Source: Blepharisma stoltei ATCC 30299 (taxonomy: Eukaryota > Protista > Ciliophora). Taken from it: a DNA stretch of 64,000 bases. The translations under genes were made by a program, and so were the position numbers. The stretch's first letter is position 1; the number at the start of each line of letters is the position of its first letter. The notes below the pieces were generated by a model. The model saw only the letters and a list, made by a program, of their open reading frames with translations. It was not told where the DNA came from and ran no database searches. Where the stretch lies: assembly GCA_965603825.1 (NCBI GenBank), contig CBFDEM010000053.1, positions 868,001 through 932,000 of the forward strand, written 5' to 3'. Shown piece by piece: positions 43,930-50,214 of this stretch.

Positions 43930-44943
43930 ATGAGCTTTTTGAAAAGGATACTTTCCAAAATTTACCAACAAGCCAGTAAGATATATTCAGAGTACCCCGA
44001 TGAAGGCTTCTCACGCAACTCTATAAAGGTCCTATTCGCATTTACTATGCTCCCTATAATCTACTCACTAAAAGGCACAGACAAAAACACAAAATACGTC
44101 CTCTCATTATCAAGAAGCTGCTCTCGAATCTACGGCGCGGCTTTCAGAATCCCAATCCCTCAGAATTGGCGTGCGTCCATTTATGGAGGATTTTCCTCAA
44201 TTTTTGGAGTCAATTTATCTGAAATTAAAAAGCCTATTACTGAATTTGAGACACTGAATGAATTTTTCGTAAGGGAAATAAAAGAAGACGCCAGGGTCAT
44301 TGGCAAAGGAGATTTGGTGTCCCCTTGTGACGGAAGAGTTATGAGCATGGGAATTGTGGAAAATAATAAAATTGACAGCGTTAAAGGGAGAGATTACTTA
44401 ATGACAAGGCTGCTTATAGGGACTGATGGGGTTAATTTTGATTGGTATGTGGACAGTGTTAAGAAAAATAAAGAAAATCAGCTTTATTATGTCAACCTCT
44501 ATTTGGCTCCTGGCGATTATCATAGATTCCATTCACCTACAGAGTGAAGAGTCTCTTTTAGAAGGCATATTTATGGGTATTTACTTGGTGTCTTTCCTTT
44601 GAACATATGGAGGAAAGGTGATGTGTTTACAATTAATGAAAGAGTAGCTTATTTTGGGGAATGAAAGCATGGGCTTTTCAATTATGTCGCTGTCGGAGCT
44701 TTTAATGTGGGATCAATTGAGGTGAATTTTGATAAAGAGCTAAAAACAAATTTGAAAAAATTTGAAAATCTTGAAAAAACTAATGATGAAATCAATATTG
44801 AAGGAGAATTCAAAAAAGGAGAAGAGTTTGGAAGGTTTAATACAGGATCGACCATTATTATGATTTTTGAAGCTCCTAAAGGGTTAGAGTGGACAATACA
44901 AAGAGGAGACAGAGTTTTATTAGGGCAGAATCTACTAAAATAA
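43930..44943 (+). CDS. PISD: Phosphatidylserine decarboxylase proenzyme (mitochondrial type)
   Basis: LNEFFVR, SPCDG, YLAPGDYHRFHSP, NERV, VGAFNVGSI, and the GRFNTGSTII self-cleavage motif; TGA=Trp. Confidence 0.93.
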
Positions 44944-45049
44944 ATTACTTATCATATCAAAGTTAAATAATTTCTTTGAATAAACTCAGAGTTATAATGA
45001 AAGAAGTAATAATATTAAAAATCTAATTTTGAATACTTAGAATATACTT

Positions 45050-45970
45050 TTATTTATTGTATTTGAGACTTCTCGCAGTGTATGGATCAATAAGATGATG
45101 AAGCAGATCCATAGTAAGCAGTGTAATAACTACATGTGGAGCTAACTTCATTACGAACAACGGAAATCCTGTGTATAATCTCCAAAAACCTTCTGATTTC
45201 AAGCTTTTCCTTACACAATCAATAAACCCTTTATATTTAAAAGTTCCATCAGGGCCTATTTCCATTCTCTGGTACTTTACTTTAATATTATCAAACGGCA
45301 TTGCAACAATGCACGACAAAGTTGCAGCCAAAACTGAGCTGAAAAATCTATGTGACGGATTTTCCTCAAAACTGGTCATAAAATGCTCATTAGATTCATC
45401 ATATGTTGCAAGCATTGTAAAATTAATTATCATTGCCCTCAAGATTGTGGGCACTGAGCCTTTCCAAAACGTAAAAATCCCTTCTTCTTTAATCATTTTT
45501 CTCTGGGCATCAAAAATGCCGGAATACTGTTTATGGTCGTAGCGGAGCCTTACCATAGTAAGATCGAGAGGATTTACAAGAAAAGAAGCTAAACCACCTG
45601 AAAAAATAGAATAAAACGCTTTTTTAACAAATGGGATTGTAGGCTGGCCTGAGTGCTCTTTGTCGTGGTCACTCAGAGTTTTATATAATCCAATACGGGT
45701 TGTGGAATAAATGGCTTGCCGATGGATTGCTGGATGAATGCCTGAGTAAAACTTTTTGATTCCTTTCTCTTTTAATATACGTTGGGCGAAATGTAATGGC
45801 TTCTCGTAGTCACCTCTGTGTCCTTCTGCTAATCCTTGAATTTTAACTTTTACGTAGTCGACTGGTAGAATAACGATTGTTCCGATTACTCCTGCGAATC
45901 CACCAATAAGGAAGTTATTTACGTGATTGGCATATCTTAGGTGGTCAAGTTCTGGATTATAAGCTTTCAT
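45050..45970 (-). CDS. Mitochondrial carrier (2-oxoglutarate/malate, DTC-like)
   Basis: Three PxD..K/R repeats; RQAIYSTTRIGLY, PTILRAM, MLATYD. Confidence 0.9.
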   Translation of the reverse strand: MKAYNPELDHLRYANHVNNFLIGGFAGVIGTIVILPVDYVKVKIQGLAEGHRGDYEKPLHFAQRILKEKGIKKFYSGIHPAIHRQAIYSTTRIGLYKTLSDHDKEHSGQPTIPFVKKAFYSIFSGGLASFLVNPLDLTMVRLRYDHKQYSGIFDAQRKMIKEEGIFTFWKGSVPTILRAMIINFTMLATYDESNEHFMTSFEENPSHRFFSSVLAATLSCIVAMPFDNIKVKYQRMEIGPDGTFKYKGFIDCVRKSLKSEGFWRLYTGFPLFVMKLAPHVVITLLTMDLLHHLIDPYTARSLKYNK

Positions 45971-46822
45971 TATAGTATAAACTATATATTAACCAGCTCC
46001 ATTACGATCTGAAAAGATATGGTATTATTGGTATTATTCAAAAAATTATGTAAAATTAATATCCAAGTTAAAGAAATTTAACAAATATTTAGAAAGGCAG
46101 ACCGAGGCAGCAATATTTAAACCGAAAATGATATAAGTTGCATTTTAAAAAATTGAGCTTCATAAAAAAATTTTAGTTTATGACGTCATCAATCATAGAA
46201 GTCAGAGAAATAATTCGCAGGCACTTTTTAATACAAGAACTCTTCATAAAGCTAATTTTGAGAGTCCTTTATTTTAATATTAAATTTGATGGCATTGCAA
46301 TAAACTTATTCGAATCTTCCAGCATTTTAATTAATTAAATTAAATTTCATAAAATTAATATATTGATAAGGAATATCTTTTTAAGTTATTATGCAATACA
46401 TGCAACTAAAGGCAATTATTGAATTACGAAAGATTTTCATTTACAAGATCTTAGGAAGAAACAAAGAGCTGTATTATAAAAGACAAGTAAAAATTATTTC
46501 CTAATAATTAAAAGAAAATTTTCGAAATTAAATCTGATTCCTAACAAATTATTATTAAATTTTTGAGGTTGCCTGCTTGCTCATTGATACTAATTTCATC
46601 AAAATTATCATCCTTTATTTCTTAAACATTTTTTTAGCTTCATATACACTATCTTCATTAAGCTCTTTTAAATCTCTATAAAGACTGTATAGAAAAATAA
46701 AAGCGACTCATAACATCTATAATACAGTTTTTTATTAATTTGTGAGAGAGAGGCGTCTAACTGATACTTGAAAACATCTAATATAATTTCATTAAAATTA
46801 TAAACTAAATTTTCAATCAAAA

Positions 46823-47623
46823 ATGATAAGGCCATTAATGCTGCTGAAGAGAGAGTTTAAAGCTAGTTTTGCCATTCTTAATGGTGAAGAGTATAAGTTA
46901 AGTGCTTATCTCCCGAATATTGGTAACAAATCTTTCACAATTTCTAGATCTCACACAATCAATGATTTTTTGAACGAAATTCAATTGCAAAGTCCAGACA
47001 TTCAAATAAAGCATTCATATAGCTCAGACTCTTCTTTTAAAGCTACTATTGAGCAAGAGCCCATAAAAGTTGAAATTAATGATGAAGAGTACGAATTCTC
47101 AAAAAACGATTCACAAGCACAGTCCAAGCCTGAGTACGCTGAAGCCTATTTTAATAAAGGAAACCTTTTATTTGAATTAAAACGCATGGAAGAAGCAATA
47201 GAAGCATACAGCCAAGCTATCAAAATTGACCCTGATTTTATTAAATCTCATTACAATAAAGGAGTTATTCTCTCTGGATTAGGCTTACATAAGGACTCAG
47301 TTCACTCTTTCGATGAAGTGATTCGAATAAACCCGAATTATATTTCAGCCTATTACCAAAAAATAAATTCTTTAATTTTATCAGGAAAAAAGAAAGAAGC
47401 AATTTCTGTGTGTGATGATGTAATTTCAATAAATCCATATGACTCAAGCACTTATTATCAGAAAGGTATTTTATTAGACAATATAGGAAACTTTGATGAA
47501 GCAATTGAATGCTTTGACGCAAGTATTGAAATTGAGCCAAACAACCCTATATTTCAGCATGCAAAACTAAGAGCTCAAGAAAATAAAAAAACAGAAAATT
47601 CCACAGAAAATAGCAAAGCATAA
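46823..47623 (+). CDS. Chimeric protein: MCU-like N-terminal domain plus TPR repeats
   Basis: First ~95 aa are paralogous to the neighbouring MCU N-terminus; then about four TPRs (AEAYFNKG..EEAIEAYSQAIKIDP). Confidence 0.85.
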   Translation: MIRPLMLLKREFKASFAILNGEEYKLSAYLPNIGNKSFTISRSHTINDFLNEIQLQSPDIQIKHSYSSDSSFKATIEQEPIKVEINDEEYEFSKNDSQAQSKPEYAEAYFNKGNLLFELKRMEEAIEAYSQAIKIDPDFIKSHYNKGVILSGLGLHKDSVHSFDEVIRINPNYISAYYQKINSLILSGKKKEAISVCDDVISINPYDSSTYYQKGILLDNIGNFDEAIECFDASIEIEPNNPIFQHAKLRAQENKKTENSTENSKA

Positions 47624-47760
47624 TTAATCTAGTTATTAGGATTTTCATATAATTTTATTTTATTTTCATTAGGATTTTATATTGATTTGCATAAAAAAAC
47701 TTATAAGTTATATTTTGTCAGCGAGTAAAAAGACCATTAATAAAATAAAATACTCTTATA

Positions 47761-48621
47761 ATGCTCAAAATATTGAGAAGAGGACTAAAAACATCCTTTG
47801 CAATCCCTTTAGGAACTGATTACAAGTTCAAAATTCTTCTACCAAATGGAAGTGAATGCTGGTTTACAGTAGATAATTCTCAAACCATTGAAGATGTCTT
47901 AAATGAAATTCAAACTGAAGATCCATCAATTGTCCAAAAAGACGCTGAAAACCCTAAAGTAACATTTAAAACTGCAATAGAAAAAGGTCCAGTAAAGACT
48001 AAAATTAATGGGGAAGAGTATGAGTTCAGAAAAAGTGAATTCCGAGAACTCAAGCCAAGCCAGCGAGAAATAGAAAATTTTGCGAATATCCTGGTTATGC
48101 ACAAGCCTACAAATAAGGCTGATTTAATAGAAGCTGCTAAGAAAAGTTTAAATTCAATTGGAAAGCAAACTTCATCGCAGCTTGCTTACTTGAAGAGCCA
48201 ACTGAAAGATATTGAAAAAGAAATCGCTCTATTAAATGATGAAAAGGCTAAAATTGATAAAAAAGTGAATTCGAGAGCCAACTTGATGATAAATTTAGGG
48301 TTTTTAATGTTTCTGTCTCAGTATTCCTTTTTTGTATACACTATTTATGGAGTTGAGTGGCTTGGCTGGGATCTTATGGAACCTATAACGTATACTGTCC
48401 AACAAGGGTTATTTATGTTTGGTGTTTTATATTTTTTAAAAACCAAAGAAAGCTGCAATTTAGACAATTTATTAGCACGATTCCAAAGCAAAAAAACTGA
48501 ATATTATACCAGAGCTTACGGATTTGACGCCAACCGATTGAAGTTTTTAGAAGAGGAGAAGCTGAAACTGCTTTCTTCAATAACCCTGCTTGAAAAGCGC
48601 TTATTTTATGATTTTAAATAA
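47761..48621 (+). CDS. MCU: Mitochondrial calcium uniporter pore subunit
   Basis: Presequence-like start, coiled coil, two TM helices flanking the WDLMEPITY selectivity filter. Confidence 0.92.
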   Translation: MLKILRRGLKTSFAIPLGTDYKFKILLPNGSECWFTVDNSQTIEDVLNEIQTEDPSIVQKDAENPKVTFKTAIEKGPVKTKINGEEYEFRKSEFRELKPSQREIENFANILVMHKPTNKADLIEAAKKSLNSIGKQTSSQLAYLKSQLKDIEKEIALLNDEKAKIDKKVNSRANLMINLGFLMFLSQYSFFVYTIYGVEWLGWDLMEPITYTVQQGLFMFGVLYFLKTKESCNLDNLLARFQSKKTEYYTRAYGFDANRLKFLEEEKLKLLSSITLLEKRLFYDFK

Positions 48622-48627
48622 TCTTTA

Positions 48628-50214
48628 TTAATCGTTAAATGCTTTTGGAATTGTTTTATTCCATAGCGAAATTTTCTCATTTCTTTTTTGCTCGTCCCAA
48701 GTGAAATCTACGATTTTTTCAATATTTTTATTAAGTTTTTGGATGTCGTCAAGGCTTCTATAGACTCCACAGCCTAGTCCAGCTGCAAAAGCGGCTCCAA
48801 GAGCAGTTAAATCTTTCTCAAAAGGAAGCTCAAGCTGCACTCCGAGAATATTTGCTTGGATTTCTAAAAATAAAACATTTTTAGTCATTCCGCCATCAAC
48901 ACAAAGTTTATTAAGCTTGTAAGGTGTATCAGAAAGCAAGGCATCTATAACTTCTTTAGTTCTAAAACAAATCCCTTCAAGCAATGCTCTCAAAATATGG
49001 GCTCGGGTTGTATGCTGTGTCAAGCCAATTATTACACCTCTTGCATCTGGCCTCCAATGAGGAGCGAACAAGCCGCTAAGTGCAGAGACACATACAACGC
49101 CATCAGAGTCCGCAACAGTACGGGCCTGTGCTTCTAGCTCTGCAAATGTCGAAAAAAGCCTCAATTTATTGAGTGCCCATTTAATTGCACTTCCAGCATT
49201 TTCCACAGATCCTTCCAGTGCATAATAAATCGGTCCATCTGGTCCAAACTTTCCATATACAGTAGTCAATAGTCCAGTCGAGCTTTGAATTATATCATTT
49301 CCAGTGCTCATTAACAAGAAGGCTCCAGTCCCATATGTATTTTTTGCTGATCCTGCTTCGACACATTGGTGTCCTAATAAAGCTGACTGTTGATCTCCAA
49401 GACTTCCACAGATAGGGATTCCTTCAAGATATCCTGATTTCATATACCCATACACCTCAGCAGAACTTACAATTTCTGGCAAAGCAGTAATTGGAATATC
49501 AAGTGCAGCCAATATCTCTTCATCCCAGAATCCTCGCAAATTCATTAGTAATGTTCTTGAGGCATTGCTTATGTCTGAAACATATCTTTTGCCTTTAGTT
49601 AAATTATAAATCATCCAGGTTTCTACTGTTCCGAATAAACAAGTGTTTTCAGACAAACTTTTTCTGACTGCTGAGTTATTTCGGATAAGCCACAAAATTT
49701 TTGAAGCAGAAAAGTAGGTGGAAATAGGAAGCCCTGTTTTTGATCTAAAATCAATTTTTAGGTTTTGAAGCTCGTGACAGATTTCAGCCGTGCGGGCATC
49801 ATCCCAAATTATTGCATTGTGGAAAGGTTTACCGGTTTCTTTATTTCATGCAATAATTGTTTCTCTTTGATTGCTAATGCCGATTCCTTTAAATAGAGTT
49901 TTAGGAATCCCTGCTTTTTGACAGGCTGTTTCTATGCATTTTAATGAAGCTTCAACATACTCTAAAGGGTTTTGCTCATGCTCTTCATGAGATGGGAAGT
50001 ATTGGGTCAAGTCAATGCTATGTGAAGCTATTTGTACACCTTTGGAGTTAAAAATCAGAAATCTTGTGGATCCTGTGCCGACATCAATAGCGCCAAGATA
50101 AGACTCTGATCCATCATAAGCAGGAGGGAGAGGCTTGCTAGTGCGTAATTTATATAAAAAGAAACCAATGGCAGCTGCAGCTGCACCACCTATCAGAATG
50201 GTATTTTTGTCCAT
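48628..50214 (-). CDS. GK: Glycerol kinase with N-terminal hydrophobic anchor
   Basis: AIDVGTGSTR, GISNQRETIIA(W), GDQQSAL, KNTYGTG, YALEG, GLFAPHW, VDGG; TGA=Trp at 49846. Confidence 0.93.

What the first reader, a model, noticed from the sequence alone, without database searches (positions are those of the whole stretch)
46823..48621. MCU N-terminal domain duplicated and fused to TPR repeats, directly upstream of MCU
Seen: residues LLKREFKASF..EEYEFSK of the TPR gene match ILRRGLKTSF..EEYEFRK of MCU without gaps at 41 of 88 identities, including the presequence-like start. The similarity stops just before the MCU coiled-coil/TM region, which is replaced by about four TPRs. Known: the MCU N-terminal domain lies in the matrix and mediates oligomer contacts. 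Inference: a new soluble matrix protein that could co-assemble with the uniporter as a TPR adaptor or dominant-negative regulator, a lineage-specific analogue of MCUb/MCUR1-type control.
Basis: partly seen in the sequence, partly recalled or inferred. Interest (0 to 1): 0.82.

Follow-up and report, generated by a model that had tools for sequence, protein, structure and literature searches.

The report
Uniporter N-domain copy fused to TPRs
In the ciliate Blepharisma stoltei, the gene just upstream of a mitochondrial calcium uniporter gene is an old, intact, apparently transcribed copy of that channel's N-terminal domain fused to four TPR protein-binding repeats; no database searched holds this architecture, and its function is untested.

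Summary
ORF 46823-47623 (+, 266 aa) and the MCU gene 47761-48621 (+, 286 aa) share their first ~92 residues: 42/92 identical, no gaps, E 5e-22. The shared part of the upstream protein models as an MCU N-terminal domain (NTD); the top 27 PDB fold matches are all MCU NTDs. It is followed by four TPRs and has no coiled coil, no membrane segment and no pore motif.

The window is Blepharisma stoltei MAC DNA (41 Mb, 64 contigs, UGA=Trp). The duplication is old, because third codon positions are near saturation. It is specific to this MCU paralog (tree support 98/98). No NTD+TPR protein was found in two protein collections (5.8 billion clusters; 1.84 billion cluster representatives), in JGI metagenome contigs, or beside related MCU genes.

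The gene looks maintained:
- The frame is open (chance about 5e-8).
- A second haplotype differs by 5 nonsynonymous and 8 synonymous changes (P about 0.015 under neutrality).
- Contigs that behave like transcripts cover the ORF and cross the NTD-TPR junction.

Its NTD evolved faster than MCU's and lost 11 of 24 family-conserved residues, including E-C-W of GECWF. That argues against simple mimicry of MCU. Matrix location and binding to the uniporter remain untested.

The parts
46823..46858 (+). Basic N-terminus of the chimera (aa 1-12, MIRPLMLLKREF). It aligns without gaps to the presequence-like start of MCU. A second Met at aa 6 is an alternative start.
   Evidence: 4 basic and 1 acidic residue in the first 15 aa; net +3 in the first 14 aa and hydrophobic moment 0.66, against 0.82 for MCU. 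Descriptive only; no validated targeting predictor was available.
46859..47104 (+). MCU-type N-terminal domain (aa 13-94), with beta-beta-beta-alpha-beta-alpha-beta-beta order.
   Evidence: AF2 model with an 8-sequence alignment, pLDDT 81. The Foldseek PDB top 27 hits are all MCU NTDs: 4xsj E 3.5e-5, TMq 0.72, rmsd 2.2 A over 93 columns. 46% identity to the NTD of the adjacent MCU.
47105..47137 (+). Linker (aa 95-105) at the NTD-TPR junction.
   Evidence: Low-confidence, unstructured stretch in the full-length model. Contigs X1 rec 2, X3 rec 18 and X4 rec 23 bridge it.
47138..47545 (+). Four consecutive 34-residue TPRs (aa 106-139, 140-173, 174-207, 208-241).
   Evidence: Pfam TPR_1 E 6.8e-35 with 4 stretches, plus TPR_8, TPR_2 and TPR_11. 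Close to consensus and OGT TPRs in the PDB. Part of a TPR family with 153 matches in this genome, best 42% identity.
47546..47623 (+). C-terminal capping helix, polar tail and TAA stop.
   Evidence: Helix 242-265 in the model; stop read.
47624..47760 (.). 137-bp spacer between the two genes.
   Evidence: No contig spans it in the four runs; only the MCU contig of X3 enters its last 8 bases (from 47753). No remnant of MCU or TPR coding sequence.
47761..48039 (+). N-terminal domain of the MCU gene (aa 1-93), the source-type copy.
   Evidence: It groups with the NTDs of related ciliate-type MCUs and keeps 22 of 27 positions conserved among the other six NTDs.
48079..48543 (+). MCU coiled-coil and two-TM channel region with the WDLMEP selectivity motif at 48367-48384. 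The gene ends at 48621.
   Evidence: Pfam PF04678 E 3.1e-20; PDB MCU chains 6xqn, 6x4s, 6wdo, 6o58 and others; motif position.

Best explanation
The upstream gene is a chimera. It arose by an old partial duplication of the 5' part (basic N-terminus plus N-terminal domain) of the adjacent MCU paralog. That part is joined in frame to four consensus-type TPRs from the large TPR family of the Blepharisma stoltei genome. The product is a 266-aa soluble protein with no coiled coil, membrane helix or pore motif, so it cannot be a channel subunit. Shown: it is encoded by an intact single exon, appears as its own transcription unit separate from MCU, and has been kept open by selection. Inferred: the inherited basic N-terminus still directs it to mitochondria, where it acts as a small two-module scaffold. 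The beta-grasp-like NTD would be one docking surface and the TPR groove the other. Its NTD evolved fast and lost about half of the residues conserved in MCU NTDs. It has therefore most likely acquired a binding specificity of its own rather than copying the contacts of the MCU NTD. Association with the uniporter's matrix face is possible but not shown.
For: - Homology and fold.
- No channel part: Pfam gives TPR families only, and the maximum Kyte-Doolittle 19-mer score is 0.76.
- Origin from the neighbouring paralog: the chimera NTD is sister to the adjacent MCU NTD with 98/98 support. The genome has four PF04678 genes, and only this one has a second NTD copy.
- Age: codon-aligned nt identity is 56% and third positions 40%; there is no similarity in upstream DNA.
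- Maintenance: stop-codon frequency is about 0.06 per codon in shuffles, so 266 open codons by chance is about 5e-8. Second-haplotype contigs differ by 5 nonsynonymous and 8 synonymous changes against 9.0 nonsynonymous expected, P about 0.014-0.019.
- Transcription-like evidence: in four runs, contigs cover 46824-47620 and, from 47753 or 47824, the MCU gene. They leave the 724-bp stretch 45986-46709 and the spacer between the genes uncovered, apart from its last 8 bases in one run. Three runs each have one contig across the junction.
- Changed constraint: relative-rate tests give 14-18 chimera-unique against 3-8 MCU-unique changes (p 0.001-0.05 with 5 of 6 outgroups), and only 13 of 24 family-conserved positions are kept.
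- The TPR part belongs to a modular family, with Kelch-like+TPR genes among its nearest relatives by eye.
Against: - The runs are only guessed to be RNA, come from one study, and are contigs, so level, strand and transcript ends are not shown.
- The polymorphism test rests on 13 sites.
- Mitochondrial targeting rests on charge and amphipathicity alone, and one acidic residue (E11) sits in the putative presequence.
- No partner is identified.
- No orthologue is available, so long-term constraint (dN/dS) could not be measured.
- Fast evolution of the NTD would also fit partial relaxation of constraint.
Confidence: 0.6

Rival explanations
1. The protein is imported into the matrix and docks through NTD-NTD contacts on the uniporter made by the neighbouring MCU, or by the other three paralogs. 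There it acts as a TPR adaptor or as an inhibitor of NTD-dependent regulation or clustering.
For: - It has the same fold as MCU NTDs.
- Human MCU NTDs self-associate in crystals and in solution, modulate uptake without being needed for assembly, and bind MCUR1 (PMC4662854).
- The N-terminus stays basic.
- No CCDC90/MCUR1-like gene scores over the cut-off in this genome, so an NTD-binding partner of that kind is not evident.
- The gene lies next to its parent MCU.
Against: - 11 of 24 positions conserved in related MCU NTDs are changed, including E-C-W of GECWF and the E-D pair, and evolution on the chimera branch is accelerated.
- Adjacency is explained by tandem duplication alone.
- No orthologue in other ciliates accompanies MCU.
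- No interaction data exist, and complex modelling was not available.
Confidence: 0.2
2. It is a TPR scaffold that works outside mitochondria. The captured NTD serves only as a generic ubiquitin-like/beta-grasp binding module or a stabilising cap, and the function is unrelated to calcium uptake.
For: - The genome holds a very large, modular TPR family (153 matches). Among the chimera's nearest TPR relatives are genes with Kelch-like N-terminal parts.
- MCU-specific conserved residues are lost.
- There is an acidic residue in the N-terminal 12 aa.
Against: The N-terminus still aligns without gaps to the MCU presequence-like start and keeps four basic residues despite fast evolution elsewhere.
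Confidence: 0.15
3. It is a non-functional by-product: a chimeric ORF that is transcribed but has no selected function and is slowly decaying.
For: Architecture seen in a single species; fast-evolving NTD; 5 amino-acid differences between two haplotypes in 266 residues.
Against: The frame is open over 266 codons although synonymous sites between the copies are near saturation (chance about 5e-8). There is an excess of synonymous polymorphism (P about 0.015). The NTD still models confidently (pLDDT 81), and all four TPRs score strongly.
Confidence: 0.05

Closest known systems
N-terminal domain of the mitochondrial calcium uniporter MCU (human 4XSJ, 4XTB, 5KUE; in the complexes 6O58 and 6K7X; fungal 6DT0, 6C5R)
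   Same: Same fold: TMq 0.70-0.72, rmsd about 2.1-2.2 A over about 90 residues, and the top 27 PDB matches are all MCU. Clear sequence homology to the NTD of the adjacent MCU.
   Different: Here the domain is not attached to a coiled coil or channel but to TPRs. About half of the residues conserved among the nearest MCU NTDs are replaced.
MCUb (CCDC109B), the dominant-negative MCU paralog
   Same: Both derive from a duplication of MCU and could in principle modulate the uniporter.
   Different: MCUb keeps the two TM helices and coiled coils and enters the pore tetramer. The chimera has none of these, so it cannot act by that mechanism.
MCUR1 / CCDC90-like scaffold
   Same: MCUR1 is a matrix-side factor reported to bind the MCU NTD (PMC4662854).
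   Different: There is no sequence or domain relationship: no PF07798 hit for the chimera, and the family is not detected over the cut-off in this genome.
Consensus-type TPR arrays (OGT TPR domain, designed CTPR proteins, Tom70-class TPRs)
   Same: The four repeats match TPR_1 strongly, and consensus and OGT TPRs are the best PDB sequence hits.
   Different: Only four repeats with a capping helix, no catalytic or membrane-anchor domain, and N-terminally fused to an MCU NTD. No database protein covers more than 59% of the sequence.
PDE12-like N-terminal domain (PF21171)
   Same: An ESM Atlas cluster carrying this domain matches the NTD model at TM 0.69 over 91 residues. This is a second case of a similar small fold placed before an unrelated domain.
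   Different: Fold-level resemblance only. No sequence similarity was seen, and the match was not examined further.

Membership tests
MCU family (PF04678), tested on the chimera 46823-47623 | Two transmembrane helices joined by the W-D-x-x-E-P (DIME) pore motif | tested here: not met
   No PF04678 hit and only TPR families for this protein. Maximum 19-residue hydropathy is 0.76, so no TM candidate, and no such motif was seen by eye in the sequence printed.
MCU family (PF04678), tested on the chimera 46823-47623 | Coiled-coil segments flanking the TM helices | tested here: not met
   Similarity to MCU ends at residue ~96. The rest is TPR helices.
MCU family (PF04678), tested on the chimera 46823-47623 | N-terminal domain with the MCU NTD fold | tested here: met
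   AF2 model pLDDT 81. Foldseek top 27 PDB hits are all MCU NTDs, best E 3.5e-5 and TMq 0.72. An ESM Atlas MCU cluster matches at TM 0.71.
MCU family (PF04678), tested on the downstream gene 47761-48621 | Pfam MCU domain over the curated cut-off, with pore motif | tested here: met
   73.5 bits against a cut-off of 30.8. WDLMEP at residues 203-208. PDB MCU chains E 4.8e-12 to 1.4e-5.
TPR repeat proteins (PF00515 and clan) | Tandem 34-residue helix-turn-helix repeats over the Pfam cut-off | tested here: met
   TPR_1 117.9 bits (cut-off 27.8) in 4 stretches. Helix pairs in the model, with pLDDT mostly above 90 over about residues 190-260.
MCUb-type dominant-negative subunit | Pore-forming paralog that enters the tetramer through its TM and coiled-coil parts | tested here: not met
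   The chimera has no TM or coiled-coil part.
MCUR1 / CCDC90-like | CCDC90-like coiled-coil domain (PF07798) | tested here: not met
   Not among the Pfam hits for the chimera at E<=1. The best match in the whole genome is 22.6 bits, below the cut-off of 33.5.
Mitochondrial matrix protein with N-terminal presequence | Cleavable basic amphipathic presequence and experimental matrix localisation | not testable with these tools
   Descriptive only: 4 basic and 1 acidic residue in the first 15 aa, net +3 in the first 14 aa and moment 0.66, and gap-free alignment to the MCU N-terminus. No targeting predictor or localisation data were available.
Hsp70/Hsp90-binding TPR co-chaperones | Two-carboxylate clamp residues in a three-TPR unit | not tested
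   Clamp residues were not mapped. Sequence similarity to HOP and Tom70 TPRs is generic.

The most novel reading that the evidence does not exclude
Blepharisma has evolved a trans-acting, soluble uniporter accessory protein. A free MCU N-terminal domain would dock on the NTD layer of one or more of its four MCU channels in the matrix and use its TPR groove to recruit another factor. That would be a regulator class not seen in animals, fungi or plants, in a genome without a detectable MCUR1.
Probability: 0.2. Interest if true: 0.7.

Novelty: new variant of a known kind. Interest (0 to 1): 0.45.

Why it matters
[quoted passage not shown] It is dispensable for assembly yet modulates uptake, self-associates, and binds MCUR1 (PMC4662854). 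A naturally occurring, selectively kept, free-standing NTD joined to a peptide-binding scaffold would be a ready-made probe for what that domain binds. If it acts on the uniporter, it would be a new mode of regulation in a lineage that has four MCU paralogs and no detectable MCUR1. It is also a clean example of a new gene formed by partial tandem duplication plus capture by an expanded repeat family in a ciliate somatic genome. If it proves unrelated to calcium uptake, it is an ordinary lineage-specific chimeric gene.

Tried and rejected
- The word-based protein search with the NTD region returned only the query. It missed even the adjacent MCU at 46% identity, so its blank carries little weight; the exhaustive HMMER search replaced it.
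The 2-sequence profile and the single NTD found no relative.
- The full-length single-sequence AF2 model was poor in the NTD and first TPRs (pLDDT 63). I used it only for helix layout and did not search folds with it.
- I looked for duplication scars. There is no DNA similarity between the two upstream regions, and no MCU or TPR remnants in the 852-bp upstream spacer or the 137-bp spacer. The order of events (full tandem duplication then replacement, or 5' fragment inserted before a TPR gene) therefore stays open.
- Synteny: three related MCU loci from metagenomes or transcriptomes (L006, L007, L008) have unrelated upstream genes (unnamed 225-aa ORF, calpain, H+-PPase). They hold no second NTD copy.
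- P0003, a 115-aa 'NTD-only' hit, sits on a 516-bp scaffold. I treated it as a fragment, not as a second free NTD.
- The NTDs of the other three MCU paralogs have no extra copies in the genome.
- I considered an assembly artefact and a read-through transcript with MCU and rejected both. Independent contigs bridge the junction, and none crosses the intergenic spacer.
- Depth figures from contigs were not used to rank expression, as the tool advises.
- Paralogs with in-frame TGA (Trp) were translated only inside scripts with the organism's code. Only TGA-free pieces were sent to search tools.

Full report
**1. What is in the sequence**

Two ORFs lie on the + strand, 137 bp apart: 46823-47623 (266 aa, P0001) and 47761-48621 (286 aa, P0002).
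- BLASTP aligns residues 5-96 of the first with residues 2-93 of the second: no gaps, 42/92 identities, E 5e-22.
- Pfam finds only TPR families in the first (TPR_1 E 6.8e-35, four stretches). In the second it finds PF04678 MCU (E 3.1e-20, residues 107-261).
- The second protein matches solved MCU channels over its coiled-coil and TM part (6xqn E 4.8e-12, plus human and fungal MCUs). It carries WDLMEP at residues 203-208.
- The first protein has no hydrophobic segment; its maximum 19-residue hydropathy is 0.76.
- Both ORFs lack in-frame TGA and end in TAA. The frame upstream of the first ATG is closed by TAA at 46793 (read).

**2. Organism**

The window is contig 53 of a 41.46-Mb, 64-contig assembly. 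The genome paper matches: 41 Mbp, 64 telomere-to-telomere sequences, 66% AT, 15-16-bp introns, UGA reassigned to Trp, and an RNA-seq time course made from mixed strains ATCC 30299 and HT-IV (PMC9942806).

**3. Is the shared part really an MCU N-terminal domain?**

The sequence of this part matches no solved NTD, so I tested it by fold.
- A profile of the two NTDs, searched with HMMER against 1.84 billion representative proteins, found six eukaryotic relatives. Four are full MCUs (P0005-P0008, PF04678, WLGWDLMEP). Two are fragments (P0003 of unclear extent; P0004 a truncated MCU). The rest were spurious hits in long proteins; the two that I scanned carry bacterial-type domains.
- With these eight NTDs as alignment, AlphaFold2 gave a confident model of chimera residues 1-100: pLDDT 81, order beta-beta-beta-alpha-beta-alpha-beta-beta.
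- Foldseek against the PDB returned MCU NTDs as the top 27 matches. Human 4xsj scored E 3.5e-5, TMq 0.72, rmsd 2.2 A over 93 columns; 5kue, 4xtb, 6o58, 6k7x and fungal 6dt0, 6c5r and 6d7w followed.
- The ESM Atlas search put an MCU cluster first, at TM 0.71.

The domain assignment is therefore tested and met.

**4. Origin and age**

- The genome has exactly four PF04678 genes, on contigs 14, 41, 51 and 53. Their NTDs are only 16-23% identical to that of P0002.
- Only the contig-53 type has a second copy. The NTDs of the other three have none.
- In a maximum-likelihood tree of 11 NTDs, the chimera NTD is sister to the adjacent MCU NTD with 98/98 support. Both sit inside the clade of related MCUs.
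- The duplication therefore came from the neighbouring gene, after that lineage separated from the other sampled relatives.
- It is not recent. Codon-aligned nucleotide identity is 56% and third positions 40%. The upstream DNA shares nothing, and the spacers contain no remnants.
- The TPR half belongs to a very large TPR family in this genome: 153 six-frame matches, nearest 42% identical. Some of its nearest relatives are TPR-only, and some carry N-terminal parts that look Kelch-like by eye.
I did not re-test it.
- The likely process is tandem partial duplication plus fusion with a member of this modular family. The order of the two events cannot be told.

**5. Is it unique?**

No other NTD+TPR protein was found in any of these searches:
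- the exhaustive HMMER search;
- the word search of 5.8 billion clusters with the full protein, where all hits cover at most 59% of the query, i.e. the TPR part only;
- two scans of JGI metagenome contigs;
- the flanks of three related MCU loci.

'Species-specific' therefore means 'not seen elsewhere in the data at hand'.

**6. Is it a working gene?**

(a) Stop codons occur at about 0.06 per codon in shuffles, in the off-frames and in the neighbouring spacer. A 266-codon open frame after near-saturating divergence has a chance of about 5e-8.

(b) Four runs from one study hold the locus as contigs.
- The contigs cover 46824-47620 and, from 47753 or 47824, the MCU gene.
- They leave 45986-46709 and the inter-gene spacer uncovered, apart from its last 8 bases in one run.
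- Adjacent genes have very different contig depths.
- This is how RNA behaves and not DNA, although the runs are only guessed to be RNA.
- In three runs a single contig crosses the NTD-TPR junction. No contig joins the two genes, so they are separate transcription units.

(c) Two runs contain a second haplotype, most simply the HT-IV allele.
- The 13 differences in the chimera are 8 synonymous and 5 nonsynonymous (E11G, S37Y, N95S, A99V, E107Q).
- About 9 nonsynonymous changes are expected for the same mutation types placed at random, giving P about 0.014-0.019.
- The three differences seen in MCU are all synonymous.

Together this supports a maintained, expressed gene. The caveats are few sites, one study and no orthologue.

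**7. How has the copied domain changed?**

- The ML tree puts nearly all divergence on the chimera branch: 1.34 against 0.014.
- Tajima-type counts give 14-18 chimera-unique against 3-8 MCU-unique changes, with p 0.001-0.05 for five of six outgroups.
- Of 24 positions conserved in at least 6 of 7 related MCU NTDs, the chimera keeps 13 and has changed 11: P19, R25, E35-C36-W37 of the GECWF motif, V40, D41, Q44, E56-D57 and P68.
- In a parallel test, 27 columns are conserved among the other six NTDs. The adjacent MCU keeps 22 of them and the chimera 13.
- The positions kept include L30-P31, F38, I60, F72 and I85-N86.
- My inference is that the fold is preserved while MCU-specific residues are not. 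Which residues lie at the surface could not be checked, because I had no coordinates.

**8. Mechanism**

Shown: a soluble two-module protein (MCU-type NTD plus four TPRs and a capping helix) that cannot form or enter a pore.

Inferred:
- The N-terminus (MIRPLMLLKREF) has four basic and one acidic residue in the first 15 aa and aligns gap-free to the MCU presequence-like start. It may still target mitochondria.
- The protein then acts as a scaffold, with the NTD and the TPR groove each binding a partner.
- Human data show that NTDs self-associate, modulate uptake without being needed for assembly, and bind MCUR1 (PMC4662854). B. stoltei has no CCDC90/MCUR1-like gene over the cut-off. Docking on the uniporter is therefore conceivable.
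- The loss of half the conserved NTD residues argues against faithful mimicry.

My estimates are:
- about 0.9 that this is a real, maintained chimeric gene;
- about 0.5 that it is mitochondrial;
- about 0.2 that it acts on the uniporter.

**9. Comparison with known systems**

It is not an MCU-family channel, not MCUb-like and not MCUR1-like; the defining features were tested and not met. It is an MCU-NTD-fold protein and a TPR protein. To my knowledge no free-standing or re-fused MCU NTD has been described. A literature search for uniporter + N-terminal domain + tetratricopeptide gave nothing relevant judging by titles and abstract openings, and Blepharisma + calcium uniporter gave only a general review. 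I rate it a new variant of a known kind, of moderate interest.

**10. Limits**

No spliced model was needed, because both genes are single exons. Multimer modelling, targeting prediction, raw-read mapping and sister-species assemblies were not available.

Noticed in passing
window 43930-50214: The chimera and MCU sit among other genes whose families are typically mitochondrial: phosphatidylserine decarboxylase (43930-44943, +; PF02666) and an SLC25 mitochondrial carrier (45050-45970, -; PF00153, three repeats). A glycerol-kinase-type FGGY kinase lies downstream (48628-50214, -). The FGGY gene looks split into two ORFs. No intron joint appears in the contigs that cover the gap between the two ORFs, so I take it for one gene read through one or more UGA=Trp codons; I did not inspect the gap itself.
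   Followed up: partly
window 45971-46822: An 852-bp spacer lies upstream of the chimera, long for this compact genome. No contig from the four runs covers 45986-46709. It shows no MCU or TPR remnants and no similarity to the MCU upstream region.
   Followed up: partly
G000 C14:151125-151946, C41:95981-96862, C51:410053-410937 (L013-L015): B. stoltei has four MCU paralogs (280-311 aa), all with W-D-x-M-E-P. The NTDs of the other three are only 16-23% identical to that of the window's MCU. No CCDC90/MCUR1-like gene scores over the Pfam cut-off.
   Followed up: partly
L023:637-2133 (+) and L024:1345-3405 (-): Two of the nearest TPR relatives carry a shared non-TPR N-terminal region that looks Kelch-repeat-like by eye. 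The expanded TPR family is therefore modular. Many family members lie within the first 20 kb of their contigs.
   Followed up: no
model of window 46823-47122 (chimera aa 1-100): Besides MCU, the NTD model matches an ESM Atlas cluster of 2',5'-phosphodiesterase 12 proteins carrying PDE12-like_N (PF21171), at TM 0.69 over 91 residues. The MCU-NTD-like fold may therefore occur in front of another enzyme.
   Followed up: no
window 46854-47524 and 48141-50181: Two of the four runs carry a second haplotype with about 1.6% differences in the chimera gene. Variant contigs also cover the glycerol kinase gene. This fits the two-strain (ATCC 30299 x HT-IV) design of the published RNA-seq series.
   Followed up: partly
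L029 (516-bp metagenome scaffold), protein P0003: A 115-aa ORF from a related ciliate-type organism has an MCU-type NTD for about 70 residues and then an unrelated tail. It is most likely a fragment or an intron/frameshift artefact, but the scaffold is too short to say.
   Followed up: partly
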